From Mytilus californianus (lineage: Eukaryota): DNA of 64,000 nucleotides. Positions 31,018-58,478 of the stretch are shown in pieces (position 1 is the first letter of the stretch; every line of letters begins with the position of its first letter). Position numbers and translations under genes: made by a program. The stretch is from contig NW_026262668.1 in NCBI RefSeq assembly GCF_021869535.1, forward strand, positions 77,748,001 to 77,812,000, written 5' to 3'. The notes under the pieces are model-generated. The model saw only the letters and a list, made by a program, of their open reading frames with translations. It was not told the origin of the DNA and ran no database searches.

Positions 31018-32403
31018 TCATGGCAATATCCAGTCTGTTTTTAAATGATTTTTATATCTAACTAAACGAAATAGTTTAATTGTTCCAAATTCAGAATTGC
31101 TACACCAAATATTTCCATCTATATCAACGGCGACATCTGTCAGTGTTCCAAATCCGTCGGAACAGTTGGCTAAAGCGACACCCTTGATGTTACCATATGG
31201 ATCCAACACGTGCAATGTGCCGTCTGTACAAGATATGATGAAATTCCCCGATGGACTACAACACATTTCGATTGGCTGAAAAATTCCATGTGTTTGAAAT
31301 CCAAAAAGGTTTATTGGTGAGTTAAACATAGCTGTTCCACCATTATAAGTTGTTAGTTCGTCTCCATTTTCATGGTATATAGTTACAAATAATCTTTTCT
31401 GGTCGCTAATTGCGAATGTTTTACTTCGTTTATTAGACACTGCTAAGTGTGGTGAAAGAAAACTACTTTCTGTGTCTTTTTTCTCAATATTTCCAAGTAC
31501 ATCGCCACCAGCCGAATACATTCTGACAATGCCATATATTTCGTCTTCTTTGATATCACCAGGAGTATTTGCATTTGGACCACATATAATAATTTTACCA
31601 TCTGATAATTCAGCGAGTCCATAGGGGAAATAATCCAATGTTGTAGCAAAATGCGACCAACCACCGCAGGTATAGCGCAGTATAAGACGACTACGTCTGA
31701 AAATCCCAAGAAGGTCTCCATTCTGAAGTTCAATTATACAGGTGCAAGGGTCAGGTGTTCTTATTTTCCCTAGTAAGTCTGTATTTGATCCAAACTTTAA
31801 AACAAAGGGTACCGTTTGAGGGAGAACATATGCCCCTCCCTTTCTTGAGGTAATGACAGAGTATACCCAACGCTTTCCTTTGTCGTTGGGTGGAACATCT
31901 AACTGAAAAGTTTTGGTCGGTTCACAAATATATTCAGTTCTGATTCCATCATTGAACATAAAATGGAACGGAAGACGTGGGTCGGGTCGATTATCCTCTG
32001 TTACCTCGCATTTGGTACTTGTCTTTTTTCTATGATCATATTGACGAAAACAAATCTTACACTTATTCTTAAAGCAAGTTGTACAATATGTTGAAATAGT
32101 TTTTTGTACACAAATTTCACAAATATTGGGTGGTCTTGAAATTTGTACGAAGTAATTTGTAAATAAATCTTGAAATCCCATTTTTGGTATACTGCATATG
32201 TTCCGACAAAGAGGGCATATAATTTGATTTTTATCCATTATCGAATCTTTATCTGTAGTAGTTAACTTTTCATTTGAAACAGTTTTTTGTTGATCACAGT
32301 AATCCTTTAAACAACGGAGACAAAAGGTATGTTTGCACGGCAACAGTTTTGGCATTATGAAATTCTCAAAGCATACTGGACAAGAGTCGCGATCTTCCAT
32401 CAT
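31018..32403 (-). CDS. RING-HC / B-box-like / NHL-like beta-propeller protein (TRIM-NHL-like putative E3 ligase), gene 1, 461 aa
   Basis: ORF 31018-32595; the true start is likely MMEDRDSC (32403), just after the acceptor ttcttttctttcag|ga (32406). C3HC4 RING CPVC...CKHTFCLRC...CPLC; CxxC-CxxC-CxxC cluster; propeller-type repeats (FPYGLAELSDG, FAISD, DVAVDIDGNIW). Confidence 0.9.
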   Translation of the reverse strand: MMEDRDSCPVCFENFIMPKLLPCKHTFCLRCLKDYCDQQKTVSNEKLTTTDKDSIMDKNQIICPLCRNICSIPKMGFQDLFTNYFVQISRPPNICEICVQKTISTYCTTCFKNKCKICFRQYDHRKKTSTKCEVTEDNRPDPRLPFHFMFNDGIRTEYICEPTKTFQLDVPPNDKGKRWVYSVITSRKGGAYVLPQTVPFVLKFGSNTDLLGKIRTPDPCTCIIELQNGDLLGIFRRSRLILRYTCGGWSHFATTLDYFPYGLAELSDGKIIICGPNANTPGDIKEDEIYGIVRMYSAGGDVLGNIEKKDTESSFLSPHLAVSNKRSKTFAISDQKRLFVTIYHENGDELTTYNGGTAMFNSPINLFGFQTHGIFQPIEMCCSPSGNFIISCTDGTLHVLDPYGNIKGVALANCSDGFGTLTDVAVDIDGNIWCSNSEFGTIKLFRLVRYKNHLKTDWILP

Positions 32404-33384
32404 TCCTGAAAGAAAAGAAAAATGTGTTAATGAATTAAAGGACATGTTCAAGGTAACGTTCTGTTTATCGATATCCCAGTCCGTTGATCTACGTTTGTAT
32501 GAAGTTTCATAGGAGAAAATCCGTTGATTGATTAGTCTACTGGTCCATAGAGAGTAATTTGTAAAAAGTTGATACAAGGTTTGTAGAATTCTCAATTTCT
32601 AAATTTCTCAGTAACATGGTTCATCATTACGAAAAGAATATCGATGAATTCAAGTGTTACGTGTTTGTTATCTCTGAATTGAAATGAATGGCGACAAGAG
32701 ACTCCTTCATATCTGCATTACAGTCCTTTCGACAATAAAAAAAAAAATTGAAGAGAAAAGAAAAAAAATGAAATGTGCACCAAAATATGACAATAGTACT
32801 GAAAAAAACCTAACGAAGTTGATGCATGATAAATGTTTCCTGTGCAAAGAATGCAAAATGCAATATATTTTCATAAAATTACAATTAAGATCCGTTGATG
32901 AATAATATACATCTAACTCACGGTTCGTTGACAATTTGTAATTATCAAACGTTCGAGAATTTAATACACCTATCTTTTTCTTTCATTTTTAAAGTGATTA
33001 AGTCGGTCTATATCATGAAAAACACATACAGACATAACTGCAAGGAAGTCTGTTAGTTTGACTTGGGTTTCCAAGTAAATTGTCAATCTCTAATTCCTTT
33101 ATGAAGCAGTTAATGTAAATTAAATAAATAAATGTAATTAACTTGGACTGAATCCATTGGTATTTTGACAAGTCTTGTTTCCAATTTATGGATTTAGGCT
33201 CACGGTATATTTTTGGTCATTTGGTTAACATTGCACTTTTGTTAAAAACGTTCAGTTAAACTGATTTTAAATTTCAATGAAATTTTTGCCAATAATTGCG
33301 TAAGATCTTATTTAAGTTTGGATTGAAAGCACAAATGGATTCATGATTCTTTTGTCCACTCGTTTCTCCCTTTTTCACCTCGTG

Positions 33385-33545
33385 AGTTACCTGTTGCATC
33401 TGCCGTACAAATAACCGGAGCGTTGCCTATTGCATCTGCCGTACAAATAGCCGGTTTGTTACCTGTTGCATCTGTCATACAAATAGCCGGTATGTAACCT
33501 TTTGCATCTGCCGTGCATTAGCCGGTGTATTACCTATTGCATATG
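33385..33545. repeat. 36-bp minisatellite, ~4.5 copies
   Basis: gttacctgttgcatctgccgtacaaatagccgg... units. Confidence 0.85.
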
Positions 33546-33568
33546 CCACAAAAAAAGGCAATACTTAC

Positions 33569-33596
33569 AGTACAGTGCATTGTTTTGATAAAAACT
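33569..33596 (-). other. Possible 28-nt non-coding 5'UTR exon of RING gene 1
   Basis: Minus strand: atctttttcag|agttttatcaaaacaatgcactgtact|gtaagt. Confidence 0.4.
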
Positions 33597-34112
33597 CTGA
33601 AAAAGATTTTGGTGTTTGTCATTAGTAACAGTTAGATGTACTGCCCTAAGCGTCTGTGTGTCGATGTAGAGAGCATCGGGTTATAACACGCGCTTCATAT
33701 GTAACACAGAGTCCACGTATTTTGAGTCCGGATCCCACCTATGGAGCTCGAAGTCCTATAAAGGGAGCCTTATGGTTGGAGCCAGAAGCCCAACTTGGCA
33801 CACTGCTTAAAAGAGCCCGGGTCCATACTGTGGAGCCCGGAGCCAATAAAATATGAAACAGGAGCCAACGCAGACCCCGTGTTATCCCCTAAATAGCCAT
33901 TTGAATGAAAGTTTGTAAAAATAAAGGTCAAAATGTAGCCGTTTGTATTTTTATGAAATAAATACAATTAGAATAACAAATCATAGGGAATGACTTCCAT
34001 TTGAACACCCCTGTTTTAAACAGTAAGCAAAATATACAGGTAAAAAATGGGGGTGGGGGTCATAGTCCAGTCTAGCTACTAAGTGTAAACGAATCGAATC
34101 CGAAATACTTAC

Positions 34113-34374
34113 CAAATAAGTTTAAAACTGAAACCAAAACAAGGTGATTGGAATTTCCAAGTTAGATAACCCCTGTTGTAATTAGATTAACCTTTAATGT
34201 GTCTTATTTAATGCAAACAAAAATGCATACAGTTTTTTTTATTTTATTCGAATTTAATTCAAAAATACCATCTTTACAAATGGACATTATGAAAACATAT
34301 TATTTCTTTTTTTCGAATCAATGATGTCATATTTCTATATTTGATATTTATTTTTACTTCCTTCTACTTAAAAG
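34113..34374. promoter_or_regulatory. Putative compact bidirectional promoter / non-coding first exons of RING genes 1 and 2
   Basis: Minus-strand donor ttg|gtaagt at 34113/34112; plus-strand donor aag|gtatgg at 34374/34375. Between them: AAAACTGAAACC (34124, IRF/ISRE-like), GGAATTTCC (34150, kB-like), AGATAA (34164, GATA), TGATGTCA (34322), ACTTCC (34356, ETS-like). The block is conserved upstream of gene 3. Confidence 0.6.
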
Positions 34375-34838
34375 GTATGGTTTCAACGACAGTAGTACAG
34401 TAAAACTTTCACGAAACTTTTTACTAAAAATCAGATTTTTTTTCACTGTTTGTCGCTCGTGAAAAGATCTTATTTTAATCAGATTGGTCATGTATAAAGT
34501 AGCCTAGTCACTGAGCTTGAAACAAGAATAGCCTTAGAAACATGATTATTTACTATGATTAGCTGGCTTTGAACTAGATTTCAGTACTTGTGAGTAATCT
34601 GTGTCTTCAATATTATTTTTAGTTGTTTTTGTGCTTTGTGTCTGTCCCAAGTCAGAAGCCTGTAACTCAGTGGTTGTCGTTGTTTTTTGTATATCATATT
34701 TTTTTTGCCTATTGTTTTTAACAAAAAATAGGCCGTTGGTTTTCTCGATTGAATTATATTTTTTCATTTCAAGGTCTGTTATCTTTTTGCCCTTATCCTT
34801 TATACAGTATGGGTTTTAATCATTGTTGATGACCTTTA

Positions 34839-36539
34839 GGGACTTATCATTTTTTACCTGGGAGGGGGCTGGTCATTTGGAAATCAAACATATAAAATTT
34901 TCTTGCCCCCCCCTAATATTTCACTATTTTTATTTGATCCCCCCTTAAAACATTTAAAAAAAATGTGATCCCCCCTCTATTATACCAGGAACATACATAT
35001 ATATTAGATATTCTGTTCCCAGATTAAACATCCCAACATTTTGAAATGGAAAACACTTGTCATGTTATTTCACGGAAATATTGCAAACATGAAATATTCT
35101 CAGTGGAATGAGTCTCAAAAAATATTTTTGAGGGAAAATTGCCTTGAAATAGGGCTCTTTCCAAGAAAAATTAGTAGGTGCTTCAATGGGATGCTTTTTC
35201 TGACTTTTTTTCTAGTTCCCTATATTGGGCTAAATAAGAAAACTTGTTCATCAGTATATATTTTGTAAAAAAATATACAGTAAAAAGTAAATGTTTTTTT
35301 TGAAACAGTAACAACACTTTATTTAGTAAAAGGGATCTGCATGTGTTTAATATATGCCCTTCTATTGAACGCTGCGTAAAATTAAGTTTACGTGAGGCCT
35401 TATTGAAAACTCCATTTAGTCGATAAACTTTTATATGGATAATTCATTCAGCTTGAACAATTCAATTACATATTTATTGTCACATATCTCACATTTCTTC
35501 TGGTGTTAGTAACCCCAAAATTTTGATGTAGCCTAAAATGTACAACTTTTGATGGAATGAGAGCTATAATTGGACCCAAAAGGATCTAAGTATAATGAAA
35601 ACAAAAAGGTACATAAGTGGTTTTTATCAACTTAGAATAATCTTTTGTATCATATTCATTTGTAACTATTTTTATGCAGATAAGTTGAATATTTGATCAT
35701 TCATTGGTGGATTTATTGGTCAACACTATATTTTTTCATGATGCAGCGTGATTTGGATTTTTTGGAACAAATTTTGCACAAATCGTTGTAGATTTCGTTT
35801 TAATTTATTCTAAATTTCTCTTTAAACTATTAAGCTGGGTGATTATAACAAAACATGGCTGTAATGCTTGAAATAACCAGTCAAATATAGAATCAAGGTG
35901 GAAGAATAGTTATCAAAAGGGCTTGAATCAATTCGACCAAGAAAGGAATTAATGTTAAAAAAAACTCTCTGCTTTTGATTTTTTTTTTAAACGGGAGCAG
36001 TTTAGATGGTGAAGAATTTTTACAATAAAAAATCCAAGTCTTCCATGCCAAAATCTAATGCGCTTGAAAAGTCAGATGAAAATCAAAATCAAGCAGAATC
36101 AGACTCTTATGAAGCTCTTGAAATGCAAGGTACAGGAGATGACGCTTGAAATAGAATCTTCAGGCCATTTGACATTATAACTGTTAAGCTTTTAGGTCCT
36201 GAGGGTTATGTTTATGTGTGATCACTAAGTGAACTAGATTTTATCAGTTACATATACAGTACACAAATTATTATTTATATATGGTTATGAAATAAATTTG
36301 ATCAATGATGGTAAAAGTATATTCTCATTTGACTGTTGTAATGTTCTTCTAAACATTTTGTCCCTTGACATGTTTGAAGCATGCAAACTACTTATTTCCA
36401 TGTGCAAAAAAATTTGACCCCCCCACTTTGAATTTATAAAAAAATTGAACCCCCCTTTTCAACTTACAGAAAAAAACTTGACCCCCCCCCCCCTACATTT
36501 TGACCAGCCCCCCTTCCCAGGTAAAAAATGATAAGTCCC
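34839..36539. mobile_element. 1.7-kb non-autonomous TIR element in intron 1 of RING gene 2
   Basis: ~37-bp near-perfect TIR GGGACTTATCATTTTTTACCTGGGA..GGGGGCTGGTCA flanked by TA; no transposase ORF. Confidence 0.8.
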
Positions 36540-37215
36540 TAATAGTTGCTTACATCTAAGTTATTTGACCTCTGAATGGTGGATAGTTGTCTCTTCTTAT
36601 TTTTATATACGTTTCGCACTATAACAGACAAATGTTTACACTATGTGATAAGCTTTAATCAACCCGGGCCTAGAAAAGCTATCAATAAATTTAACAGAGA
36701 ACATCAAATATATCCCATCATACAACAGTTACACAACATCTTAACTGATAAAAATATACTACCGAAGAGAACCACTGGAGATTCCTGACATTGGAAAGAC
36801 ACAAACATGTGATGGGGTTTAATGAGTTTTTCTTCAGATCTCAACCCCTCTTTGTTTAAAAAAAATGAACTGTTAATATACATGTATATATAGTTCCATA
36901 TATTTCTACGCCTTGCTATATACCTTTACGTCTTGTTCTGTCGTTTTCGTTTTTGTTTTTGTATTATATTACTTTGTTTCCTTGTGCTTTTCAATTATTT
37001 ATAAGTAATATAAGTACTTGTGTTTATGTCACTTTGTTTTTTTTCTTGTGTTTTTGTTTGTCTGTTATGTATAGGATGGGCTGTCGAAGCTTTATGCTAA
37101 CGAAGTATCCGTTTTGCGGATATGGGATCACACGTCCGTTAAATGGTTTTTACTTATTCCTGTGTAACTATAGTATACAGTTGTTATTTTTTTCGTTGTA
37201 GGTAATGGCAATATA

Positions 37216-38625
37216 ATGAGTGACGAAAATGTATGTTCAGTGTGCTATGATACATTCAAATTTCCCAAAATGCTACCATGCAAACATTCATTTTGTATAT
37301 CATGTCTTCACGAATTTTTGGGAGGTTTACAAGATCAGTCAAACTTAATATGTCCGTTATGCAGGGAACCTTGTTATGTACCAGAAAAGGGATTTACCGA
37401 CTTCCCAACTAATAACTTTGTTCCAGTCGAGAAACCACCCAAAGTGTGTCAAGAATGCCATAAACTACCCGTGTACCAAAATTGTTTTTTATGCAGTACA
37501 GTTCTGTGCAAAAAATGTAATCGAATGCATTCGCATACTAAACATGCAACCGAACGAATACGCGGTGACGACAGTGACGACGAAAACATCGTCAGTCTTC
37601 CTCCACATTTACATTGGCATCTTATGCATCAAAATATGAAGACTGAGTTTTTATGCAAACAAAATTCTATGTTTGTCGGCGAGTTTCTTCCTATTGAAGA
37701 AATCAGAAAAACTGTCCGATCTATGGCATTTTCAAGAAATGGTGGCGTTTTTGTCAGACTGGATAAGAACGAATTTCTCTTAAAGTACGACAAACATGGG
37801 AAAATAATGGACAGAATTCCGTTGCCAGCAGAAGCATCAACTGTACTGGAAATAAAGAATGGATGTATTTTGCTCGCACATATAGGGGCTAAGGTTGTTG
37901 GTTGTTACAATCCACCCAAATTTCAAGTCTTTGCAAGAACGCCAACTTTTCATCCGATTGGTTTAGCGGAACTTCAAAATGAAAACATTGCGGTCAGTGG
38001 ACCAACACATCTATGCAATGCAGAGTGTAAAGATGGTGACTGTGAGTTGTCAAATAGTAGTCCTGGTGTTCTGCACATTTATACAACACAAGGAAAGCTA
38101 CTGCAAGAAATATCCAAAGACGCAATGGAGTATATCTTTAAGTGCCCGACTCAAATGGCTTCCAGTTATAAGGCTGGAACCATTGCTGTATGTGACACTA
38201 AATTTCATAAAGTTATAGTACTGGATTACGACGGAAAAGTGAGAGGATTGTATAAAGGCTGGAGAAAATTGCCGTTCTCTCTATTTACGGACGGAGAACC
38301 ATTCCTTCCTCTCTCCGTTTGCACAACTGCAGACGGAAATTTTATCGTGGCTGATATTTATAAAGAATGTTTACATGTCCTTAGTCCGCTTGGAAAATTT
38401 ATAGGCATTATGCGCGGTGAGGAAGGTGACTCTTTAATAGAGAGCAGTGCTTTATGTGTCGATTCCGAACAAAACATTTGGGTTGGTCACCATTCCCAAG
38501 GAACAATTACAGTTCTTAAGCCTAGTCGTCTGAATAATATTTTTGATCAGAGGCACTTTCCCTTCCTTCATGGTGAAGAACTCCGATTACCATTGTTTCC
38601 TGAACTTAATCTTGACGGGAACTAG
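37216..38625 (+). CDS. RING-HC / B-box-like / NHL-like beta-propeller protein, gene 2, 469 aa
   Basis: Single-exon ORF after the acceptor tttcgttgtag| (37201). RING CSVC...CKHSFCISC...CPLC; B-box-like CQEC-CFLC-CKKC-HSH; repeats HPIGLAEL, IAVCD, FIVAD, ALCVDSEQNIWVG. Confidence 0.93.
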   Translation: MSDENVCSVCYDTFKFPKMLPCKHSFCISCLHEFLGGLQDQSNLICPLCREPCYVPEKGFTDFPTNNFVPVEKPPKVCQECHKLPVYQNCFLCSTVLCKKCNRMHSHTKHATERIRGDDSDDENIVSLPPHLHWHLMHQNMKTEFLCKQNSMFVGEFLPIEEIRKTVRSMAFSRNGGVFVRLDKNEFLLKYDKHGKIMDRIPLPAEASTVLEIKNGCILLAHIGAKVVGCYNPPKFQVFARTPTFHPIGLAELQNENIAVSGPTHLCNAECKDGDCELSNSSPGVLHIYTTQGKLLQEISKDAMEYIFKCPTQMASSYKAGTIAVCDTKFHKVIVLDYDGKVRGLYKGWRKLPFSLFTDGEPFLPLSVCTTADGNFIVADIYKECLHVLSPLGKFIGIMRGEEGDSLIESSALCVDSEQNIWVGHHSQGTITVLKPSRLNNIFDQRHFPFLHGEELRLPLFPELNLDGN

Positions 38626-41225: not shown

Positions 41226-41348
41226 TTTTGTTATGTTTAGGTCTTGTGTTTAAACTGCTGGATGTTTTATGAAGTTATGCCGCAGTGTTGTTTGAGTAAA
41301 TTAAAAGTATTCTTGCAAGGCAATAGTTTTGGCATTGTTAAAATTCTC

Positions 41349-41937
41349 TATAAAAAAGAAGTTGTGGTATGATTGCCAATGAGACAACTCTCCACAAGAG
41401 ACCAAATGACACAGAAATTAACAATTATAGGTCACCGTACGCCCATCAACAATGAGCAAAGCCCATACCGCACAGTCAGCTATTAAAAGGCCCCGAAATG
41501 ACAATGTAAAACAATTCAAACGAGAAAACTAACGGCCTAATTTATGTACAAAAAATGAACGAAAAACAAATTTGTTACACATAAACAAACGACAACCACT
41601 GAATAACAGGCTCCTGACTTGGGACAGGCACATACATAAAGAATGTGGCGGGGTTAAACATGTTAGCGGGATCCCAACCCTCCCCCTAACCTGGGACAGT
41701 GGCGTAACAGTACAACATAAGAACGAACTATAAAAATCAGTTGAAAGAGGCTTAACTCATCAGATGGATAAAATACAAATACTACAAATACAAGTGGACG
41801 TGGCCGGGTACTTGTACATCCAAACAACAAAAAGACACTAAGTACAGATCTGAGAGTACTCGCAGTTACTGACAGCTAGTTCAAAGCCACTAACAACTAA
41901 TAAAACAATCATGCATCCAAGACTAAATTATCTAATC
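41349..41937. repeat. High-copy interspersed repeat (taaaaaagaag.tgtggtatgattgccaatgagacaac family), truncated at the right end
   Basis: Related copies at ~40108-40700, 45093-45845 (inverted), 34530-34825 (inverted), 59640-59770 (inverted). Confidence 0.75.
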
Positions 41938-42097
41938 TACTACTGGACAAGAGTCGCGATCTTCCATTATCAATTTATAAAATGTAAAAAAGGGCACAGT
42001 GCTCAGTTTTTTTTCCATGTTAACCCATACATTGATGCTTTACAAAATTCCTAGATGAATATGTACAATGATTTTTGAAGATCATACTGGAATTATC

Positions 42098-42098
<1 letters not shown>

Positions 42099-42148
<50 letters not shown>

Positions 42149-43071
42149 TCTAAATTGAAAACAACGTTCAAACCTATGATTGCGTTGGATAAAAACCGCA
42201 ATTTTTATACGTGTGCATGCAAAACAAATTTCTTGGTAGAGGGTTCTAAATACAGCACAAACAACATTTTCCAAAAGACCAAATGAGTGAACAAGTATAT
42301 TTTAACAAAACGCATTTGACTAGCAGGTCGAACAACTGATGTTCTTAAACCCTGCTGACTGCCATTGGCGATTGCCAAATAAACGTATCACAAGATGTAA
42401 CAAAATAGATCTTATTATTAATTTATTACCAAACAGAAAACAATAAAAACTTGCGGAAAAGATGGTATACCGCAAACATGAGGTGCAAAAATTTGTACAC
42501 CATATCCGGATTTCGACAATTAATGTCTCTTCAGTGATGTTAGGAATCGAAACGGTATTTGGAAGGCCATATAATTTACCTCAATTTAGGATAGACTCTT
42601 GAATTTTGAAAGAGTCAAAATAGGATGAACGGATCATATAAACCCGAAGGCAAATATAATACAAGCCCAAACGAAAAAATATAAACAAGTCTAAATTGAA
42701 AACAACGTTCAAACCTATGATTACGTTGGATAAAATCCGCAATTTTTATACGTGTGCATGCAAAACAAATTTCTTGGTAGAGGGGTCTAAATACAGCACA
42801 AACAACATTTTCCAAAAGACCAAAAAAGTGAAAAAGTATATTTCAACAAAACGCATTTGACTAACAGGTCGAACAACAGATGTTCTTAAACCCTGCTTAC
42901 TGCCATTGGCGATTGCCAAATAAACGGATCACCAGATGTAACAAAATGGATCTTAACTATTAATTTAATACCAAACAGAAAACAATAAACTTGCGGAAAA
43001 GATGGTATACCGCAAACAAAAGGTGCAAAAATTAGTACACCATATCCAGATTATATATATATATATATATA
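42099..43071. repeat. Unclassified element: two ~365-bp direct repeats (period 541 bp) bracketed by (TA)n
   Basis: aagtctaaattgaaaacaacgttcaaacctatgat starts at 42146 and 42687; (TA)n at both ends. Confidence 0.75.
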
Positions 43072-43109
43072 AAGGTAACATCCGGCCACCGAAAGCTTTA
43101 TTATTATAG

Positions 43110-43275
43110 AGCCTAGGTGGTCGAGTGGTCTAGCGCGTTGGGCATAGTGCAAGGCGATTTAGTGCCACGATATCTCAGTAGCATGAGTTCGAATCCCGGC
43201 CAGGGAAGAACAAAAAATTTGCTTCCGCAAATTTACAGATCTAACATTGTTGGGCTGTTGTTTAGACGTATTATA
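43110..43275 (+). mobile_element. tRNA-derived SINE
   Basis: A box ggtggtcgagtggtctagcgcg, B box gagttcgaatccc, no cloverleaf, AT-rich tail. Confidence 0.75.
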
Positions 43276-44210
43276 TACATATCGTGTATCTATGTGTAAG
43301 AGAATATTTCACCGGCAACATGATTCTATCTAGTCTTGAGCAAATAAACTCGATTTATCATCGGAGTTCTCTCTTTATACTTTAAAATATGTGATATCAA
43401 ACTAACAAGTTTAACATGTTCTATATATATATATTTGGCGTGTACCGTTTAACATTTGATGCTGACAGACGATGCATTCAAATATACCGGGGTAGTTTGC
43501 TAAACAACCAGTGGAAAATATTTCAGCATATTTAGAAGTTCAGACCCTGTTATTAGTTGTGATTACATATTTATTTACATCAGATCAGGAGAAATTGACT
43601 TTCCTACCGAACTTCCTACGAACTTCCAGAAAAGTCTCGTATTTTTAGGTTTTAGTTGTAATATTGCTGACGGATCACCACTGATGCCAGGGGCTCCCGA
43701 GTGGTACAATGGTCATTTTGAAAGAAATGTTATATATTTGCATTAGTCCTACCTAGCTCTGATTCAGAAAATGGTCAAGATTAAAATCTCAAAACATGAT
43801 CATACTCTGATCTCGGACAATAAAATGATATGGGTTAGATTTAAAAGACTGATGTTAATAATTTGATCCTTTCTTCAAAATTTAACCTAAATAACGCGGC
43901 ACTAACAAATACATTTTGTAATTAACAAATACCGAAAAAAAAGATTTACACAAAGGCACTTGTCTCTGAACAAAATTTACCTATATACCTGTATATATCG
44001 GTATTTTGTTTTCAGAGACAAGTGCCTGCGAAAACAAGTTAGGGTAGGGGATGCAGTATGCTTTGAAATAGCCTGGGACCCTGGCTCGATCACTGCATGC
44101 TCGGCGGTTCGTTAATATGATATTTGAATGATGCATCGTGGTATATATATAGCGTCATTTCTTGACACATGGCGAAGTATAAGATTGGGTCAGGATGACA
44201 GGCTAGTTTT

Positions 44211-44221
44211 GAAACTGAAAC
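44211..44221. promoter_or_regulatory. Canonical ISRE/IRF-like site, displaced half of the gene 3 promoter module
   Basis: GAAACTGAAAC immediately left of the TIR element; context agtttt-gaaactgaaac parallels agttta-aaactgaaac at 34119. Confidence 0.55.
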
Positions 44222-45092
44222 TAGGGGCGTGTTTTATTGGTCTCTTCTGCACATCTCCAGAATGTCTTCTGGTGAAGAGTCCAAAAAAAATGAATCTGGA
44301 CCTCTTCTGGAGATATTCTACTGAAGATCAATAAAACAAAAATTCAATTTGCCGTCGAATATAGCAGATTTTTGTTATGTTGGATGACATAAATGAAGTT
44401 TACGATGATTTTATAGAAAATTAAAATACGTCCGGTAGACATGACTGTAAAAGTGTGCTCTGTTCGTGACATTTTTCTTTGTTCTTTCCTCTAACTCAAT
44501 TTTGCTAGACAAATCTGGCTTAAACCCCCACTATTTGATTTTTAAGAATAATCTTAAACTGCACAAAAATTCGTCAATGTTTTTCTCGAATATGATCAAA
44601 AAGGACATCTTGTCTATCCAATTTTTTTAAAGTAACCAAACTGGATTATTTTTGTATAAAGCAAAGATATCGGAAAGTTCTCGAAATCATTTTTCTCTGG
44701 TGGTCCTTGAAGAAAATCTTCTGGTCCTAACTATTATTTCTATTGCAAAATTTCGATGGTCAAAATCTTCGGACCACCACTTTTCAAAAAAATTCATTGT
44801 ATATGTATCAATATGCAAGTATATATACAATGTATACCAGACATTTCTCAGACTGTTTTTTTTTTCTTTTTCTTTTTAATAAATCCGTTGGTTGTGTACT
44901 GATTGATACTTCAGTCTGGGAGAACAAGATTTATTTCAACATAAGTTGTTATTAGCTTTGAACAAACTTCCAGTAATTGCAAATACTCTTATTTCGGTGC
45001 TTTGTGTCTATTGTCTTAATGTAAGATTTTTATTTTATTTTTTTTTTTTGTGTCTCGTACCGATCTTTTGAGTTAATCTAATTGCAATTGAT

Positions 45093-45845
45093 TTGTGCAG
45101 GTTGTTCTTATATTGTACTGTTACACCACTGTCCCAGCTTCGGGAAGGGTTGAGCGCTCACAAACATGTTCTTGTACTGTTACAGCACTGTCCCAGGTTA
45201 GGGGGCGGGTTGGGCCGGATCTCGCTAACATGTTTAACCCCGCCACATTCTGTATGTATGTGCCTGTCCCAAGTCAGGAGCCTGTAATTTAATGGTTGTC
45301 GTTTGTTGCTGTGTTACATATTTGTTTTTCGTTCATTTTTTTGTACATTAATCAGACCATTAGTTTTCTCGTTTGAATTGTTTTACATTTGTGATTGCGG
45401 GGCCTTTTATATCTGACTATGCGGTATGGGCTTTGCTTATTGTTGAAGGCCGTACGGTGACCTATAGATGTTTATTGCTTTGTCATTTGGTCTCTTGTCT
45501 CATTGGCAATCTTCGTTTTTATATCAACCCTGCCATATTCTTTGTGTGCCTATCCCAAGTCAGGAGCCTATAGTTTAGTGGTTGTCGTTGGTTCATGCCT
45601 CGACTCATATTTGATATTTTGTAAATTATTTTGTTATGTATAATTAGGCCGTTAGTTTTTTCGTTTGAATTGTTTCTCACACTTTTCATGTCGGGCCTTT
45701 TATAGACGACTTTTAATACAGTATCGGGTTTTGTCATTGTTGAAGGCCTTAATTACGGTTGCCTATAATTTCTTACATCCACTTCATAATTGAACTCCGG
45801 TGGATAGTTGCCTCATAAGCAATCATACATCTCTTCGTTTTTATA
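45093..45845. repeat. Inverted, partly tandem-duplicated copy of the same interspersed repeat
   Basis: Reverse complement of 41349-41937 motifs; cccaagtcaggagcct occurs twice. Confidence 0.75.
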
Positions 45846-46569
45846 TTATATACTTGACTTTTAAACTCGTGTTTTCCTGAACCGAGTCCTGAACAGGCAT
45901 GACATATTTGTCACTGGGCGTTAAAAATTAGCAACAAACAATCAATCAATTTAAACTTGTGTTAAATAAGAAGAAAAACCATTTGATATTTATTCATTTA
46001 TTGGGGTGGGGGGCAGGTGGATTTCATATATGAATATGGTTGCCTGGTAAGAGCTGAAAAATAGTCATAATTAGCGACAGATTAAAAAGTTAATAATGCC
46101 CTATTCCCTTCCCCATCCTTCATCTATAAATTTAAACTGACCATAGCCCAACTTAGTGTTGAATGTAGCGTTTAACACCAATCAATCAAAATCCCTTCCC
46201 TAGAATATCAAATAGTCGTCCCTGAACTGTTATTGTCCGTGTAGTTCTTATATTTATCCAGCTTATCGTCCTACAGGGATGTCCTACTAAGACTGTCATA
46301 CCATAAGAACGTTTCTCTAATTCTTCGTCAATTATCCCTTTCTGCACCCATTGTATAAAAAAAATTTAATCAACGTGTGGTTCGTTTGATCTCAGTTCTT
46401 CATTGGTTAAAATCCGATTATGACGTCGAATTTTCTTGCTTTCCTCTGAATTTCCTATTGTGACGGCATGAAAAAAGGCGACCATGCCTGATGACGTCAC
46501 ATAGAAAGAACACATCTTTTTGCAGATCATTCGAAAAGAAGGAATAAATTTGCCTGCGTATTGTTTGAA

Positions 46570-46748
46570 AATCATTAGAGAAACAGATTCCACCACCAAA
46601 TCTCGTGTAATACGATATTTATCCACTCTCGACAGTTAAATTTTAAATATTTAAAACGCTCGGCGAGCCTCGCGTTTTAAATTTGAAAATTTAACTGTCT
46701 CGAGTGGATAAATATCGTATCACACTCGATGCAGTGGTAGAATCTATA
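46570..46748. repeat. Palindromic element end nested in the Harbinger-like element
   Basis: agattccaccac...acgatatttatccactc.cgacagttaaattt / reverse complement ...gtggtagaatct. Confidence 0.6.
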
Positions 46749-46904
46749 TTTATAACACAGCTCACATTCTAATATATCTGCATTCATAAATTTATTAATG
46801 TCATTTAGACTAAACGACGCCATGTTTGTTATGTGCCTCTGCCGTCTAAACTACCTAACAAAAAAGAAGAGGTGGAAGAGAGCCAGAAGATATTCCCTAT
46901 TCAA

Positions 46905-49572
46905 AATAAAATGCTTCGCTGGGCGCAGCTTGATACGACCGCAGAGGTCGAACCCTGAACAGTTGGGGCAAGTATGGACACAACATTCAAGCTTGATACA
47001 GCTCTGAATTTGGATTGTGATTAAATATTTGACACAGCATAGGTTTCTGACACAGAAAGAATGTGGTCTAAGAACTTCAATTTTTTTAATTTACCTATTA
47101 TGGTCCAATGTCCAAAATCAAAATACATGGTTAGATTCAGCATATCAAAGAACCCCATATATTCAATTTTTGTTGAAATCAAACAAAGTTTAATTTTGGA
47201 CCCCAACTTGGACAAACTTGAAAACTGGTCCCATAATCAAAAATCTAAACACATGTTTAGATTCAGCATATCAAAGTACCCGAAGAATTCAATTTTTGTT
47301 AAAATCAAACTAAGTTTAATTTTGGACCCTTTGGACCTTAATGTAGACCAATTTAAAAAACAGGACCCAAAATTAAAAATCTAAATACATGGTAAGATTC
47401 AGCATATCAAAGAACCCCATATATTCAATTTTTGTTGAAATCAAACAAAGTTTAATTTTGGACCCCAATTTGGACCAACTTGAAAACTGGGCCAAAAATC
47501 TAAAATCTAAATACATGTTTAGATTCAGCATATCAAAGAACCCCATATATTCAATTTTTGTTGAAATCAAACAAAGTTTAATTTTGGACCCCAACTTGGA
47601 CCAACTTGAAAACTGGTCCCATAATTAAAAATCTAAACACATGTTTAGATTCAGCATATCAAAGAACCCCAAAAATTCAATTTTTGTTAAAATCAAACTA
47701 AGTTTAATTTTGGACCCTTTGGACCTTAATGTAGACCAATTTAAAAAACAGGACCCAAAATTAAAAATCTAAATACACAGTTAGATTTGGCATATCAAAG
47801 AACCCCAATAATTCAATTTTTTATGAAATCAAACAAAGTTTAATTTTGGACCCTTTTGACCTCAATATGAACCAATTTGATAGCAGGCCCACAAATAAAA
47901 AATCTAAATACATGGTAAGATTCAGCATATCAAAGAACCCCATATATTCAATTTTTGTTGAAATCAAACAAAGTTTAATTTTGGACCCCAATTTGGACCA
48001 ACTTGAAAACTGGGCCAAAAATCTAAAATCTAAATACATGTTTAGATTTTGCATATCAAATAACCCCATATATTCAATTTTTGTTGAAATCAAACAAAGT
48101 TTAATTTTGGACCCCAACTTGGACCAACTTGAAAACTGGGCCCATAATCAAAAATCTAAACACATGTTTAGATTCAGCATATCAAAGAACCCCAAGAATT
48201 CAATTTTTGTTAAAATCAAATTAAGTTTAATTTTGGACCCTTTGGACCTTAATGTAGACCAATTTAAAAAACGGGACCCCAAATTAAAAATCTAAATATA
48301 CGGTTAGATTCGGCATATCAAAGAACCCCAATAATTCAATTTTTGATGAAATCAAACAAAGTTAAATTTTGGACCCTTTGGACCTCAATGTGGACCAATT
48401 TAAAAACGGGGCCCAAAATCCAAAAACTTAATACACGGTTAGATTCAGCATATTAAAGAACCCCAAGAATTCAAGAATAAAACCCCATTGAAATTGATCA
48501 AGAAATAAGCAATTTATACGAAGTATCTTCTTTTGCACAACACTGTGCAATTGAATATTTCTTGCTATTGCGCAATACTGTACAATTGACAATTTCTTGC
48601 TATTGCGCAATATTGTGCTATTGGATATTTCTTGCTATTGCGCAATACTGTGCAATTGAAGATTTCTTGCTATTGCGCAATACTGTGCAATTGAAGATTT
48701 CTTGCTATTGTGCAATACTGTGCAATTGAAAATTTCTTGCTATTGCACAATACTTATTATATAATAATTTACACATCCTGTTTGGTGTGTATCTCCTACC
48801 ATATCATTATTATTTGCTTTTAAATATAAATCAGAAATAATCAACTTAAAATGGAAAATTTTAAAAGAAAAAAAAAAGGAAAAAAAGAAAAAAAAAAAAA
48901 AAAAAAATCTCCCCCCCCCAAATTTTTTGAACCCCCTTATGATTCATCACCCCCAAACTCAATCCCAGCCTTCCCTTTGTGGTATGGTACCTTGCAGTAC
49001 AATTTCAGAGAGATCCATACACTTGAACACAAGTTATTGTCTGGAAACTAGAAAAATGCTTATTTTTGGCCCCTTTTTGGCCCCCAATTCCTAAACGTTT
49101 CGGGCAATTACCCCCAAACTCAATTCCAGCTTTCCCTTTGTGATATGGAACCTTGTAGTACAATTTCAGAAATATCCAAACACTTACACACAAGTTATTG
49201 TCATGAAACTAGAAAAATGCTTGTTTTTTGCCCCTTTTTTGGCCCCTAATTCCTAAAATTTTGAGGCAATTACCCCCAAAATCAATTACAGCCTTCCCTT
49301 TGTGATATGGAACCTTGTGGTACAATGTCAGAGAGATCTATACACTTACACACAAGTTATTGTCTGAAAATTACAAAAATGCTTATTTTTGGCCCCTAAT
49401 TCCTTAACTGTTGGTACCATAACCCCCAAAATCAATCCCAACCTTCCTTTCGTGGTATTGAACCTTATGGTGAAATTTCATGGAGATCCATTCACTTAAA
49501 CTAAAGTTAGAGTGCGAAAACCAATGTGTCTTCGGACGACGCCAGACGACGCCGGACGACGACGACGACGAC

Positions 49573-49603
<31 letters not shown>

Positions 49604-49660
49604 CCAACGTCATACCAATATACGACCAAAAAATTTTTAATTTTTGCGGTCGTATAAAAA
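46905..49660 (-). mobile_element. HINE family A copy, expanded (2.75 kb), with several internal arrays
   Basis: Reverse complement of family A termini; (GAC)n at 49536-49605; arrays of 126/136-bp and 35-bp units. Confidence 0.88.
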
Positions 49661-49713
49661 CAGAAGTGGACCTCTTCTGGCTCACTACCGAAGAACAAAA
49701 AAACACGCCCTAG

Positions 49714-49975
49714 AATTACAGTGGAAATTTCCAAGTTAGATAATCCCGTCATAATTTGATAACCTCATGCTTTATATTTATACAGATATATCGTAAACTT
49801 GTTTCTTTCGAATATAATTAACAAATATTAAAACTACGAATTTATATTATGATAACCTATACAAGGTATCTTTTTAAAACTATGATATCAATGATGTTAT
49901 AGTATCAATTATATTATAGTATGTGTCACAATTCTATATTTAGAACTGAATGTTACTTCCTCCTAACAGGATAAG
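49714..49975 (+). promoter_or_regulatory. Putative promoter / non-coding exon 1 of RING gene 3
   Basis: GGAAATTTCCaagttAGATAA (49723), atcaatgatgt (49887), ttctatattt (49932), ttacttcct (49952) and donor aag|gtatgg (49976) occur in the same order as in 34150-34380. Confidence 0.6.
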
Positions 49976-50895
49976 GTATGGAATAGTTTCATTTCTATAT
50001 TACCTCCGTATTAACAATCTTTTAGTGTCAAATGAAATCTTCTATCAGCAGAATTGTGCTTAATATTATGCATGCTGCCTACCACCGTGATACGTATAGT
50101 AAAACCATGTGGTAGTTATGCAGTTGCTTCGTTTACTTTAAATTTGGGCTTGTCATGCTGTAGTTTACTTTTCGTCCCATAAGATTAATTTATTTCTAGT
50201 TGCATATATTTCATGCATGTTGACGAGAACAACTTAACAATAAATCAAAAATGAAGGTTCTGCAAAGTGGGCGGCGTCGACCGATATATGAATTATGTCC
50301 GAAAATTTCGACTGCCCCTAGAAAATACGGGTATTGTTGTAGAGGCAGACATTTTGTTATCACTGCAGGTCACAAAGAGTTGTAGCAAGAGTGATCAAGA
50401 GTTCTTTAACATGCAGAGAGCGTGGCACTTTCCCTACAGAAATCATCGGATTTTATCACACCTTTTCCGATCGTTGGACGTGGCTGAGTAGTTTTGAGGG
50501 TGTGGATGGGGGTTTACAGAATAGAGATTAATGAGGTGCTAAAATATAAAGAATAGAGAAAACTGGGCGAAAAGTATAACAGAATAGAGAAAAATTACCT
50601 AAAAAATTAAAGAATACAGAAATGAAGGACCCTCATACATACCTCATTTATACATCCTGCACAGCCAAACGGACGCACTTATTTACTGCCAGTTGTGAGA
50701 TTCCTCGTCTACTTTCGGGGTTGCTTGCAGTTAGAAAAGGGCTGCAGCTTTTGTAATACCATACAGTCCTTATGAATGTTCATAGGAGTTTTGTCTCTTA
50801 GGCAGGATGCCTTCAGCCTATGCCAACATTCGAAAAATATATAGTCAACATATGCCTATACCAACAAAATGCACTAGGCGTTGTTATAGCAATTT

Positions 50896-52597: not shown

Positions 52598-54074
52598 TTA
52601 TTTGAAAAAAAATAAACCACCAAAATCATTGTCCAATAGCTTAATTTGTAATCTTGGGGTAGAAAATTTGAATTAAAACAAAATTAAGATAGAAAGAATT
52701 GCAGTTTATATATAATGGGAAAAAACTATTTTAGAAACATGTGTCATTAGGTAGGAATACCAATATCTTGTAATTTTATCAATGGAAACATTAACAAAGG
52801 AAACATGCCCTTATATTTATAAACACATATTTGTATGTCAAGATGTGTGTGTCTAGTGTTGTAGACGTGTCATAATGAATCAATGTAAACATATAAGCTT
52901 TGTTATGACTGGTAAGGACAGTTATTTAGTTACTGTTAGTTTTTTCATTAAGACCGACCGAAGGTGTCTCAAAGTTTGCATGTGTAAAACAACCAGTAAT
53001 TCCAAGCGTTGATAAAAAGGTCTAATGTTGGTGAGACTAGGTAGTGTCCGGCTGACATATATGCATCATCGTGTTTGACATGCATAACTGGCAGAATTAA
53101 GTCTACAAGTGCATCACCCCAAGTCTTTGGTGGGGTTCGTGTTGCTCAGTCGTTAGTTTTCTATTTTGTGTTTTGAGCTTTAAAGAACTACCATTCTCAT
53201 TAATTGCTTTCATCACATGTCATACGATTCTCGAATTACATTGCTAAAAAATTCATATGGAGAGATGATTATTCCTATTGAAAGAAAAAAAAACCTTTTC
53301 CTGCTTCTTTAATGCGAATAAAAAAGAGATCAGCTACACCAGAGAAATATAATACTATATTTTTTAAAACTCAATGTTGAATTGCTTTTTTCCCCTAATT
53401 TTAAATGGAAACATACTATTTCTTTCACTTCCTTCTAAAACATTTTCTCAAGAAATTTAGAATCAAACAACTTATTTAAAAAAAAACATACCCACAACAA
53501 AAAATGAATGGTCATTGATTTGTGCGATAATTTCACATGGATATATACCAATTAATTATTTTTTGTCTCATTTTAGGCAATATTGTGGTTCAGCAAAGTC
53601 CTAATTTGTTAGTCACCGAATGGTAGAATTTTGTTTAGACTTCAATATTGAGGATAAATATGTAAATTTAATTCGTTCAATAACAAATGTAACATTCACC
53701 ACCACAGTCTTTATTTCTTCGCTGAAGTCCTTTAGGTAACTGTTAAGCTTAATGTTTGCTTTACGCCAACCTAGCAAACAATGCTAACTAAGATAAAGAA
53801 CGACACAAAGGTGATATTACTTTTATAGAATAATTTCTCTATATTTTATGGGATTTTCATCTCAAGAGCAGTAACCACATGCTTTTCTTATCGCGATTTC
53901 TTCTTTTTTTCTAAAAATTTGACACAACCCAAGCTGTATTTGTCTTGATTTTACACGATCTTATAATTTTCCATACAAATTAATGACACACATTATGTTA
54001 AGATCCAATTTTGATTTTACATAATATATTTTACCAGTAAAATTTTGTTTAATTTCGTTACAGGTTGTGGCAAA

Positions 54075-55484: not shown

Positions 55485-55659
55485 ATACCCCGCTTTGTTA
55501 TTCTTCATGTGGTTTATATTATAATAACGAAATAGATCCAATAAATAAACTGTGTTACATCAGCATCAATCTTTATATGTCATTCATTCTGTAATCTGGA
55601 CTGACAATCGACTATTGTAGTTATATTTGGAGTATTGTTCATTTGCATTGTTGTTATTT

Positions 55660-58330: not shown

Positions 58331-58478
58331 GGCTATACAGCCCTCGAACGATCGGTTTGAAGTAGTGCTGTAGTCAGGTCTTATAAATTGATGTAGGGAG
58401 TGAAGTGTTGATGTAGTCAGGTGTGATATTCTGATGTAGTCCAGCCTTATGTTTTGTTGTAGAGTCTGATATAGTTTT

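What the first reader, a model, noticed from the sequence alone, without database searches (positions are those of the whole stretch)
34113..34374. Compact bidirectional ISRE-kB-GATA promoter shared by two divergent RING-propeller genes
Seen: a minus-strand donor (TTG|GTAAGT, 34113) and a plus-strand donor (AAG|GTATGG, 34374) lie only ~260 bp apart and point at the acceptors of gene 1 (32406) and gene 2 (37201). Between them are IRF-like, kB-like, GATA, CRE-like and ETS-like motifs. The kB+GATA core is retained in the gene 3 promoter although flanking DNA has diverged. Known: adjacent Rel and GATA sites typify insect immune-inducible genes, and ISREs mark interferon-type responses. Inference: two distantly related E3 ligases are co-induced as a pair, possibly an undescribed bivalve antiviral or immune module.
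Basis: partly seen in the sequence, partly recalled or inferred. Interest (0 to 1): 0.75.

Follow-up and report, generated by a model that had tools for sequence, protein, structure and literature searches.

The report
Conserved two-way promoter of mussel RING genes
A roughly 260-base stretch between two back-to-back mussel RING-finger genes is a real two-way promoter.

Summary
The core of the finding holds. Gene 1 (minus strand, CDS 31018-32403) and gene 2 (plus strand, CDS 37216-38625) are 28% identical RING/B-box-like/NHL-like propeller genes that point away from each other.

- **Gene 1 junction:** a spliced RNA contig confirms 34113>32405 exactly. Its first exon is seen over 34113-34150.
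- **Gene 2 junction:** the predicted donor at 34374 is not used. The contig runs 34380-34589 and splices 34589>37202. The M. trossulus RefSeq isoform also reads through that position.
- **Promoter gap:** the ends of the two divergent transcripts lie at most about 230 bp apart.
- **Conservation:** 34107-34365 is a single-copy island. 176 of 259 columns are invariant in five Mytilus species, against 10-21% in the flanks.
- **Motifs:** A TATA box at 34336-34342 sits 30 bp before the likely gene 2 start.
- **GATA site:** it is lost in M. trossulus.
- **IRF-like element:** it lies inside gene 1's 5' UTR exon.
- **Untested:** factor binding, sharing of elements between the two genes, and immune co-induction.

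The scan has met this before. The paralogous copy in this window is s1-302532, and a similar kB/ISRE block at other TRIM-like genes elsewhere in the genome is s1-342908. This is a new member of a known kind, with TAP1/LMP2 as the closest precedent.

The parts
31018..32405 (-). Gene 1, exon 2. The whole CDS is 32403..31018 including the stop: 461 aa with a RING, a weak B-box and an NHL-like propeller.
   Evidence: ORF. Pfam RING E 5e-8 and B-box E 0.02. Acceptor ...ttctttcag|G gives an exon start at 32405. X1 contig of 1783 nt is identical over 31900-32404.
32406..34112 (-). Gene 1 intron 1 (1707 nt, GT..AG on the minus strand).
   Evidence: Joint 32404/5-34112/3 'skips 1707, CT..AC (cut +1)' in X1, depth 18.1.
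34113..34150 (-). Gene 1 exon 1, non-coding, the part seen in RNA. The true start is at or to the right of 34150.
   Evidence: 38-39 letters lie beyond the joint in the X1 contig. The donor ACTYACC is kept in all five species.
34122..34143 (.). IRF/ISRE-like element TTAAAACYGAAACCAAAACAAG. It contains the IRF core AANNGAAA and is one base short of a full ISRE. It lies inside gene 1 exon 1, about 225-245 bp upstream of the gene 2 start.
   Evidence: 21 of 22 columns are invariant in five species. The paralog at 44211-44222 has the full GAAACTGAAACT.
34149..34158 (.). kB-like site TGGAATTTCC (TGGGAATTCC in the M. edulis complex). Both forms fit NGGNNWTTCC.
   Evidence: The consensus comparison comes from my own knowledge of Rel-site consensus sequences.
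34164..34169 (.). GATA motif AGATAA, 5 bp from the kB-like site, followed by the invariant ATAACCCC.
   Evidence: Kept in 4 of 5 species and in the paralog. M. trossulus reads TATATAA.
34321..34331 (.). bZIP/CRE-like ATGATGTCATA.
   Evidence: Invariant in five species, 10/11 in the paralog.
34333..34342 (+). TATA box of gene 2 (TTCTATATTT, with TATATTT from 34336).
   Evidence: Invariant in five species and 10/10 in the paralog. It lies 30 bp before A34366 and 44 bp before the contig start at 34380.
34354..34365 (+). TTACTTCCTTCT: an ETS-like core, or part of the gene 2 initiator region. Conservation across species stops right after it.
   Evidence: Invariant in five species, 11/12 in the paralog.
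34372..34380 (+). It is not used in the RNA seen.
   Evidence: The X1 contig is colinear from 34380 to 34589. The motif is missing in M. edulis, M. galloprovincialis and M. trossulus. The M. trossulus isoform X1 reads through the homologous place.
34380..34589 (+). Gene 2 exon 1, non-coding, the part seen in RNA. The start is inferred at about 34366. The donor is ACTT|GTGAGT at 34589.
   Evidence: X1 contig of 375 nt with 0 differences covers 34380-34589 joined to 37202-37366. The joint 'skips 2612, GT..AG'. The donor is kept in M. coruscus.
34590..37201 (+). Gene 2 intron 1. It holds a high-copy repeat (34637-34854) and a 1.7-kb insertion bounded by inverted repeats (34836-36542).
37202..38625 (+). 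Gene 2 exon 2. The CDS is 37216-38625: 469 aa with a RING, a weak B-box and an NHL-like propeller.
   Evidence: Stranded raw RNA reads (X21) lie on the expected strand.
49713..49990 (+). Paralogous promoter block of gene 3. Its left end, with a full ISRE, is at 44170-44222, separated by a 5.5-kb transposon.

Best explanation
The interval is the shared divergent promoter region of two old paralogs, both RING/B-box-like/NHL-like ligase genes, in the California mussel.

Shown:
- Gene 1 transcripts run leftwards through a short non-coding exon (34113 to at least 34150) and splice 34113>32405.
- Gene 2 transcripts run rightwards through a non-coding exon (seen over 34380-34589) and splice 34589>37202.
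- The two transcript ends are at most about 230 bp apart.
- The DNA from the gene 1 donor to just before the gene 2 start (34107-34365) is single-copy and is the only strongly conserved stretch between the two coding exons in five Mytilus species.

Inferred:
- Gene 2 starts about 34366, 30 bp after the invariant TATA box.
- Gene 1 starts without a TATA box at or just right of the kB-like site.
- The invariant blocks are transcription-factor sites: IRF-like, kB-like, GATA/ATAACCCC, bZIP/CRE-like and TTACTTCC. At this spacing they can act on both core promoters, making the pair signal-dependent. Immune or stress induction through Rel and IRF factors is the most likely mode.

The IRF-like element is downstream of gene 1's start and far upstream of gene 2's. 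If it works as DNA, it is an intragenic element for gene 1 and a distal one for gene 2.
For: - **Junctions and exon extents:** (X1 contigs with 0 differences from the window). Raw stranded RNA (X21) places gene 1 on the minus strand and gene 2 on the plus strand.
- **Independent gene model:** the M. trossulus RefSeq isoform X1 (480 aa) starts at an ATG about 73 nt after the homologous TATA+30 position. It uses a donor 91 nt after that position, and the 11 extra residues fit exactly.
- **Conservation island:** 176/259 invariant columns in the block, against 10/47 on the left and 27/275 on the right.
- **Identity to M. trossulus:** 80% in the block, against 23% and 29% in the flanks. In M. trossulus, BLAST aligns only 34107-34367 of the whole 4.8-kb spacer.
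39/43 invariant against 137/216 in the rest of the block, Fisher p=2.7e-4.
- **Paralog:** the block upstream of gene 3 keeps the TATA box, the bZIP-like site, TTACTTCC, kB+GATA and a full ISRE. It has lost the gene 1-type donor. This argues that the IRF element is kept as DNA for the plus-strand gene and not as gene 1 UTR.
- **Copy number:** single copy.
- **Not an RNA gene:** no Rfam match and no fold beyond shuffles.
- **Background:** bivalve IRFs bind ISRE (PMC13524488).
Against: - Each junction rests on one assembled contig from one run.
- The raw-read RNA run showed no reads at all on 34067-34460, at a CDS depth of only 1-6x.
- Contig ends are not transcription starts. No CAGE or 5' RACE data were available.
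- The five species amount to about two or three independent lineages.
- The IRF-like element misses the first G of the ISRE consensus and lies in a transcribed exon.
- The GATA site is lost in M. trossulus.
- A more distant relative keeps the divergent gene pair but has no recognisable block and no kB or ISRE match in its spacer.
- ISRE+kB composites are not enriched genome-wide: 7 hits against 4 control hits.
- Nothing shows induction, factor binding, or that any element serves both genes.
Confidence: 0.75

Rival explanations
1. These are two independent core promoters that merely sit back to back. The left elements (IRF-like, kB-like, GATA) serve gene 1 only. The right elements (bZIP-like, TATA, TTACTTCC) serve gene 2 only. 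There would then be no shared control and no paired induction.
For: - The motifs fall into two groups, each next to one transcript end.
- Gene 2 has its own TATA box.
Against: - The gene 3 paralog has no gene 1-type partner or donor, yet it keeps the left group (ISRE, kB, GATA) about 230 bp upstream. The left group is therefore kept for the plus-strand gene as well.
- At 230 bp, factor sites normally reach both core promoters, as in TAP1/LMP2 (PMC2191963).
Confidence: 0.25
2. The promoter is real, but it is not an immune or interferon-type module. On this view, other factors read the motifs for tissue-specific, developmental or general stress expression, and the resemblance to ISRE, kB and insect Rel-GATA pairs is coincidental.
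For: - The ISRE match is imperfect, the GATA site is dispensable in M. trossulus, and no module was seen in a more distant relative.
- Both genes are expressed at a low, similar level in three unselected RNA-type runs.
- The TRIM-NHL proteins of model animals are mostly developmental or RNA regulators (my own knowledge).
Against: - The kB-like decamer fits Rel consensus in both of its conserved forms.
- The paralog carries a perfect ISRE next to it.
- A TRIM56-annotated ligase and IRF2 rise after poly I:C in M. galloprovincialis hemocytes (PMC7773633). Whether that transcript is one of these genes is unknown.
Confidence: 0.4
3. The left part of the block is conserved because it is gene 1's 5' UTR and splice donor, that is, an RNA-level function rather than a protein-binding DNA element.
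For: The IRF-like element lies wholly inside the transcribed exon 34113-34150.
Against: - The paralog keeps and even improves the element while the donor next to it is gone.
- There is no stable fold.
- Conservation runs on without a break for 200 bp past the seen end of the exon.
Confidence: 0.1
4. The motifs and donors are chance matches in AT-rich spacer DNA, and there is no promoter here.
For: Single motifs are common. GGAATTTCC with up to one mismatch occurs at the chance rate: 17 seen against 18.4 expected. There are 193 GATA sites in the window.
Against: Spliced contigs start or end here in both directions. There is also the conservation island and the uniqueness of the cluster.
Confidence: 0.03

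Closest known systems
Human TAP1/LMP2 (PSMB9) shared bidirectional promoter (Wright et al. 1995, PMC2191963)
   Same: - Two divergently transcribed, functionally linked genes separated by a few hundred bp.
- An NF-kB element sits near one gene. In that system it drives induction in both directions.
- Transcripts of the two genes do not overlap.
   Different: - The human promoter is 593 bp, GC-box rich and has no TATA box at either end.
- The mussel block is about 230 bp, AT-rich and has no GC boxes. It has a TATA box on the gene 2 side.
- The mussel genes are paralogs of each other.
- Function is shown for TAP1/LMP2 and only inferred here.
Insect immune-gene promoters with closely spaced Rel (kB) and GATA sites (my own knowledge of the Drosophila literature; not checked in a paper here)
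   Same: A kB-like decamer and a WGATAR motif lie 5 bp apart. They are kept together in four Mytilus species and in the paralogous promoter.
   Different: - The GATA motif is lost in M. trossulus while the rest is kept.
- No mussel Rel or GATA factor has been tested on it, and inducibility is unknown.
ISRE/IRF-E elements of interferon-stimulated genes; bivalve IRFs that bind ISRE (PMC13524488)
   Same: - The element has GAAAC cores with the spacing AANNGAAA.
- The paralog carries the full GAAACTGAAACT.
- Oyster and scallop IRFs are reported to bind ISRE.
   Different: - In this promoter the first half-site is AAAAC, not GAAAC.
- The element sits in gene 1's 5' UTR exon.
- No interferon-type cytokine or induction has been tied to these genes.
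TRIM-NHL E3 ligases (TRIM2/3/32/71, Drosophila Thin/Brat)
   Same: The RING is closest to the TRIM2/TRIM3/TRIM56 RINGs (E 6e-12 to 4e-10). There is a weak B-box and weak NHL-repeat matches to TRIM2/3/71 and Thin.
   Different: - Only about 40-50 residues separate the B-box from the propeller, so a TRIM-type coiled coil seems absent.
- The B-box is below the Pfam cut-off.
- Each gene has a single coding exon.
- The family is a local cluster of seven genes on one chromosome.

Membership tests
Bidirectional promoter (divergent gene pair with starts less than 1 kb apart) | Two genes on opposite strands, transcribed away from each other | tested here: met
   Gene 1 is on the minus strand and gene 2 on the plus strand. 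Stranded reads in X21 agree.
Bidirectional promoter (divergent gene pair with starts less than 1 kb apart) | Transcription starts less than 1 kb apart | tested here: met
   The spliced contig ends lie at 34150 and 34380. These are minimal extents, so the gap is at most about 230 bp. The exact starts are not mapped.
Bidirectional promoter (divergent gene pair with starts less than 1 kb apart) | The fragment drives expression in both directions, and shared elements are needed for both | not testable with these tools
   This needs a two-way reporter and site mutants.
ISRE / IRF-E | Sequence fits GAAANNGAAAC(T/C) | tested here: inconclusive
   Here the sequence is AAAACTGAAACC: one mismatch, with the IRF core AANNGAAA present. 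M. edulis has AAAACCGAAACC. The paralog has the perfect GAAACTGAAACT.
ISRE / IRF-E | Bound by an IRF and confers induction | not testable with these tools
   There is only literature showing that bivalve IRFs bind ISRE.
NF-kB/Rel site | Decamer fits a Rel consensus (HGGARNYYCC / NGGNNWTTCC) | tested here: met
   TGGAATTTCC (M. californianus, M. coruscus) and TGGGAATTCC (M. edulis, M. galloprovincialis, M. trossulus) both fit NGGNNWTTCC. The consensus is taken from my own knowledge.
NF-kB/Rel site | Bound by a Rel protein | not testable with these tools
   No binding data.
Insect-type Rel+GATA immune module | kB and GATA sites close together and conserved | tested here: inconclusive
   They are 5 bp apart and kept in 4 of 5 species plus the paralog. 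GATA is replaced by TATATAA in M. trossulus.
Insect-type Rel+GATA immune module | Gene induced by infection | not tested
TRIM-NHL proteins | N-terminal RING | tested here: met
   Pfam RING families above cut-off in both proteins. PDB TRIM2 RING E 6e-12.
TRIM-NHL proteins | B-box | tested here: inconclusive
   PF00643 at E 0.005 and 0.02, 15-17 bits against a cut-off of 24.
TRIM-NHL proteins | Coiled coil between the B-box and the C-terminal domain | not tested
   No coiled-coil predictor was run. Only about 40-50 residues lie between the B-box match and the start of propeller-wide similarity, which is too short for a TRIM coiled coil.
TRIM-NHL proteins | C-terminal NHL beta-propeller | tested here: inconclusive
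   PF01436 at 21 bits against a cut-off of 20 in gene 2 only. There are weak PDB matches to the TRIM2/3/71 and Thin NHL domains (E 1.5e-5 to 4e-3). No structure was predicted.

The most novel reading that the evidence does not exclude
The block is a Mytilus-specific composite IRF + Rel (+GATA, +bZIP) enhancer-promoter. It would switch on a pair of divergent TRIM-NHL-like ligases together after viral or microbial challenge. That would make it an invertebrate counterpart of an interferon-stimulated gene pair. It was duplicated as a unit to give the gene 3 promoter. It would offer a defined cis-regulatory handle on antiviral signalling in an animal without a known interferon.
Probability: 0.2. 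Interest if true: 0.6.

Novelty: new member of a known kind. Interest (0 to 1): 0.4.

Why it matters
Almost nothing is known about cis-regulatory logic in bivalves, whose immune gene families are hugely expanded. This case offers a compact promoter whose position is supported by spliced RNA and whose candidate NF-kB-like and IRF-like sites are footprinted by five-species conservation. It also has a natural paralogous copy that a transposon has split. That makes a simple experiment possible: a two-way reporter with site mutants and challenge RNA-seq. Such an experiment would ask whether mussels run an ISG-like, Rel/IRF-driven programme. It would also ask whether paired ligase genes are co-controlled. 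If the motifs prove inert, this remains an ordinary bidirectional promoter of a paralog pair.

Tried and rejected
- **Exact-protein look-ups:** both window proteins returned nothing.
- **Logan contigs with orthologs:** six public contigs (L034, L035, L046, L047, L048 and the P0048-P0051 set) were fetched in the hope of 5' UTRs. All are colinear with the M. edulis genome, introns included. They are genomic or unspliced and say nothing about first exons.
- **Whole-block DNA search of the genome:** it found only the block itself.
- **kB+GATA 20-mer with 2 mismatches:** hits were below the control count.
- **ISRE+kB composite pattern:** 7 hits against 4 control hits, none next to a RING-propeller gene. 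This is not a widespread module at that stringency.
- **Distant relative (L038):** the divergent gene pair is kept, but no block, kB or ISRE is found in the 3.8-kb spacer.
- **Non-coding RNA reading:** rejected. There is no Rfam match and the fold z-score is +0.79.
- **GATA/TTATCT as gene 1's TATA box:** considered because M. trossulus has TATATAA there. Set aside because the gene 1 contig reaches 34150, only 13-20 nt from it.
- **Literature searches:** searches on Mytilus ISRE promoters, bivalve TRIM-NHL and mollusc bidirectional promoters found nothing on this locus.
- **Joined sequences:** One local script read exon 1 and the start of exon 2 in series only to list upstream ATGs. Two local alignments placed the two flanks of the transposon at the paralog side by side.

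Full report
**What is there**

The window is AT-rich animal DNA (GC 0.29-0.40). Earlier notes of this scan call the genome the California mussel. That fits the orthologs I found in four other Mytilus genomes at 82-94% DNA identity.

Around the finding lie two long single-exon ORFs that point away from each other:
- Gene 1 is on the minus strand (CDS 32403..31018, 461 aa).
- Gene 2 is on the plus strand (CDS 37216..38625, 469 aa).

Both have a clear N-terminal RING, a sub-threshold B-box and weak NHL/propeller matches. The RING is closest to the solved TRIM2, TRIM3 and TRIM56 RINGs, and the C-terminus matches the NHL domains of TRIM2/3/71 and Thin weakly. The two proteins are 28% identical over their full length, so 'distantly related RING-propeller genes' is correct. 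They belong to a local cluster of seven such genes within 130 kb of the chromosome. Gene 3 (54045-55484, plus strand) is a 72% (DNA) paralog of gene 2.

**Checking the observation**

- TTG|GTAAGT on the minus strand, with the exon ending at 34113.
- AAG|GTATGG on the plus strand at 34374.
- Acceptors that give exon starts at 32405 and 37202.
- The IRF-like (34124-34135), kB-like (34149-34158), GATA (34164-34169), CRE-like (34322-34329) and ETS-like (34356-34361) motifs.

Single motifs are at chance frequency. GGAATTTCC with up to one mismatch occurs 17 times against 18.4 expected. The combination is not at chance frequency. All five motif classes fall within 262 bp only here in the 64-kb window, and in none of 100 Markov-1 simulations (the definitions were made after the fact). 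The kB+GATA 20-mer occurs exactly only twice in the 1.65-Gb genome, here and at 49724 in front of gene 3.

**RNA evidence**

I had one read-laying run and used it on 31900-37800 with four runs.

Run X1 has contigs that lack introns and are identical to the window, so it is cDNA of the same species.
- One contig (1783 nt, depth 18) joins 32404/5 to 34112/3 and skips 1707 bases, with GT..AG on the minus strand. This is exactly the predicted gene 1 junction. It continues for 38-39 letters to about 34150 and then ends.
- A second contig (375 nt, depth 7.8, no differences) covers 34380-34589 without a break and joins 34589 to 37202 (GT..AG, skips 2612).

Its donor is ACTT|GTGAGT at 34589, not AAG|GTATGG at 34374.

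The raw-read stranded RNA run X21 places gene 1 on the minus strand and gene 2 on the plus strand, at 1-6x depth. It gave no reads on 34067-34460 and no joints. At that depth this neither supports nor refutes the first exons.

The two contig ends leave 34151-34379, about 230 bp, as the largest possible untranscribed gap.

**Independent support from another species**

The M. trossulus RefSeq set has a 480-aa isoform X1 of the gene 2 ortholog beside the 469-aa form. Its coding range in L037 starts at 9092. That base is the A of an ATG which lies about 73 nt after the position 30 bp downstream of the conserved TATA box. Six codons and one base later there is a donor, CAAG|GTACGA. Joined to the exon 2 start, this gives exactly the 11 extra residues. 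In that species too, the first exon therefore starts at the right edge of the conserved block and reads through the place homologous to 34374.

**Conservation**

I fetched the orthologous loci of M. edulis (L032), M. coruscus (L033), M. galloprovincialis (L036) and M. trossulus (L037) through the gene 1 orthologs. All keep the divergent arrangement.
- In M. trossulus, the only part of the 4.8-kb spacer that BLAST aligns is 34107-34367 (78%).
- In M. edulis and M. galloprovincialis it is 33576-34365.
- The closer M. coruscus aligns more widely.

In a five-species alignment, 176 of 259 columns are invariant in 34107-34365. The figures are 10 of 47 to the left and 27 of 275 to the right. Identity to M. 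trossulus is 80% in the block and 23% and 29% in the flanks.

The invariant runs of six or more bases are:
- TTAAAAC and GAAACCAAAACAAG (the IRF-like element).
- TTCCAA (the 3' half of the kB-like site).
- ATAACCCC (overlapping the GATA motif).
- TCTTATTT, AAAAATG and TCGAAT.
- ATGATGTCATA (bZIP/CRE-like).
- TTACTTCCTTCT.

The five species amount to only two or three independent lineages, so these numbers overstate the evidence somewhat.

Three details change the picture:
- The kB-like site exists in two forms, TGGAATTTCC and TGGGAATTCC, and both fit NGGNNWTTCC.
- The GATA motif is TATATAA in M. trossulus.

A more distant relative (L038, proteins 57-59% identical) keeps the divergent pair, but I found no block and no kB or ISRE match in its spacer.

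**The paralogous copy**

The gene 3 promoter is split by a 5.5-kb transposon, which was the subject of the earlier finding s1-302532. With the transposon set aside it aligns with this block over its whole length (73% pairwise). It keeps a perfect GAAACTGAAACT, the kB+GATA core, the bZIP-like site (one change), the TATA box (10/10) and TTACTTCC (11/12).

It has lost the gene 1-type donor. Only a 30-bp remnant of a gene 1-like start lies upstream, at 41941-41970 (M. coruscus has an 81-bp remnant at the matching place). This suggests that the whole divergent unit was once duplicated and the second gene 1 copy decayed. It also shows that the left-hand elements are kept for the plus-strand gene and not merely as gene 1's UTR.

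**How it most likely works**

Shown:
- Two divergent transcripts leave this interval.
- The interval is single-copy.
- It is not an RNA gene.
- It is under constraint.

Inferred:
- Gene 2 initiates about 34366, 30 bp after T34336 of the TATA box. This is 14 nt before the contig start and exactly where cross-species conservation stops.
- Its 5' UTR of about 224 nt carries several short upstream ORFs.
- Gene 1 initiates without a TATA box at or right of 34150, next to the kB-like site.
- The invariant blocks are factor sites that, at this spacing, can serve both core promoters.

The closest worked example is the human TAP1/LMP2 promoter, where one NF-kB site near TAP1 controls TNF induction in both directions (PMC2191963). 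Bivalve IRFs are reported to bind ISRE (PMC13524488). In M. galloprovincialis hemocytes, poly I:C raises IRF2 and a TRIM56-annotated ligase (PMC7773633). Whether that transcript is one of these genes is unknown.

The immune reading therefore remains an inference, and I put it at roughly 35-40%. The plain statement that this is a real, conserved bidirectional promoter I put at about 75-80%.

**What is new**

Bidirectional promoters of paralog pairs and NF-kB/IRF composite promoters are well known. The mussel case is a new member, and it is well delimited. This scan had already noted the paralogous copy (s1-302532) and a similar kB/ISRE block at another TRIM-like family elsewhere in the genome (s1-342908; I did not test that one).

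The specific ISRE+kB composite is not a common genome-wide module: 7 hits against 4 control hits, none at a RING-propeller gene.

**Limits**

- Each junction rests on one contig of one run.
- Transcription starts are not mapped.
- No expression series was examined.
- Motif-to-factor assignments rest on consensus sequences recalled from the literature.
- Public contigs fetched for 5' UTRs turned out to be unspliced genomic DNA.
A local script read the two exons in series only to list upstream ATGs.

Noticed in passing
window 34836-36542: A 1.7-kb insertion in gene 2's intron 1 is bounded by 40-42-bp inverted repeats (34836-34875 and 36501-36542, 95% identical). It is absent from the M. coruscus ortholog. 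One contig of run X20 skips it (joint 34826>36544). It is probably a young non-autonomous DNA transposon, perhaps polymorphic.
   Followed up: partly
window 34637-34854: A very high-copy short repeat reaches word depth of 42,000-59,000 in a DNA-type run and is abundant in RNA runs. Other copies lie at 41484-41632 and 45259-45750. It begins only 48 bp after the gene 2 exon 1 donor.
   Followed up: no
window 33382-33557: A tandem repeat of about 72 bp sits in gene 1's intron, with two overlapping copies here. It is expanded to at least six or seven copies in M. coruscus (L033 9993-10492).
   Followed up: no
window 41941-41970 (and perhaps 41282-41335): A 30-bp copy (97%) of gene 1's first codons, in gene 1's orientation, lies 2.2 kb upstream of the gene 3 promoter. 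M. coruscus has an 81-bp remnant at the matching place (L033 488-566). This fits a duplication of the whole divergent unit followed by loss of the second gene 1 copy.
   Followed up: partly
L033 4227-8538 (M. coruscus): The M. coruscus assembly carries two tandem copies of the gene 2 ortholog, one of them truncated. Each is preceded by the same repeat. This may be a real duplication or a haplotype artefact.
   Followed up: no
L037 9380-9371 (M. trossulus): The GATA motif of the block reads TATATAA in M. trossulus, while the neighbouring kB-like site and ATAACCCC are unchanged. This could be a species-specific rewiring or just one assembly's allele.
   Followed up: no
G000 contig C88, 77.67-77.80 Mb (window plus 75 kb upstream): Seven RING-propeller paralogs (31-37% identical to gene 1) lie within 130 kb. 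Genes 1 and 2 are the only adjacent divergent pair among them.
   Followed up: partly
L038 4772-11377 (ENA metagenome-type contig, unknown mytilid-like organism): A more distant relative keeps the same divergent gene 1-like/gene 2-like pair with a 3.8-kb spacer, but no recognisable promoter block.
   Followed up: partly
window 37206-37217: A three-codon upstream ORF (ATG GCA ATA TAA) in exon 2 overlaps the gene 2 start codon by two bases. At least four more upstream ATGs lie in exon 1 (34377, 34490, 34542, 34555). Translation of gene 2 may be held down by upstream ORFs.
   Followed up: no
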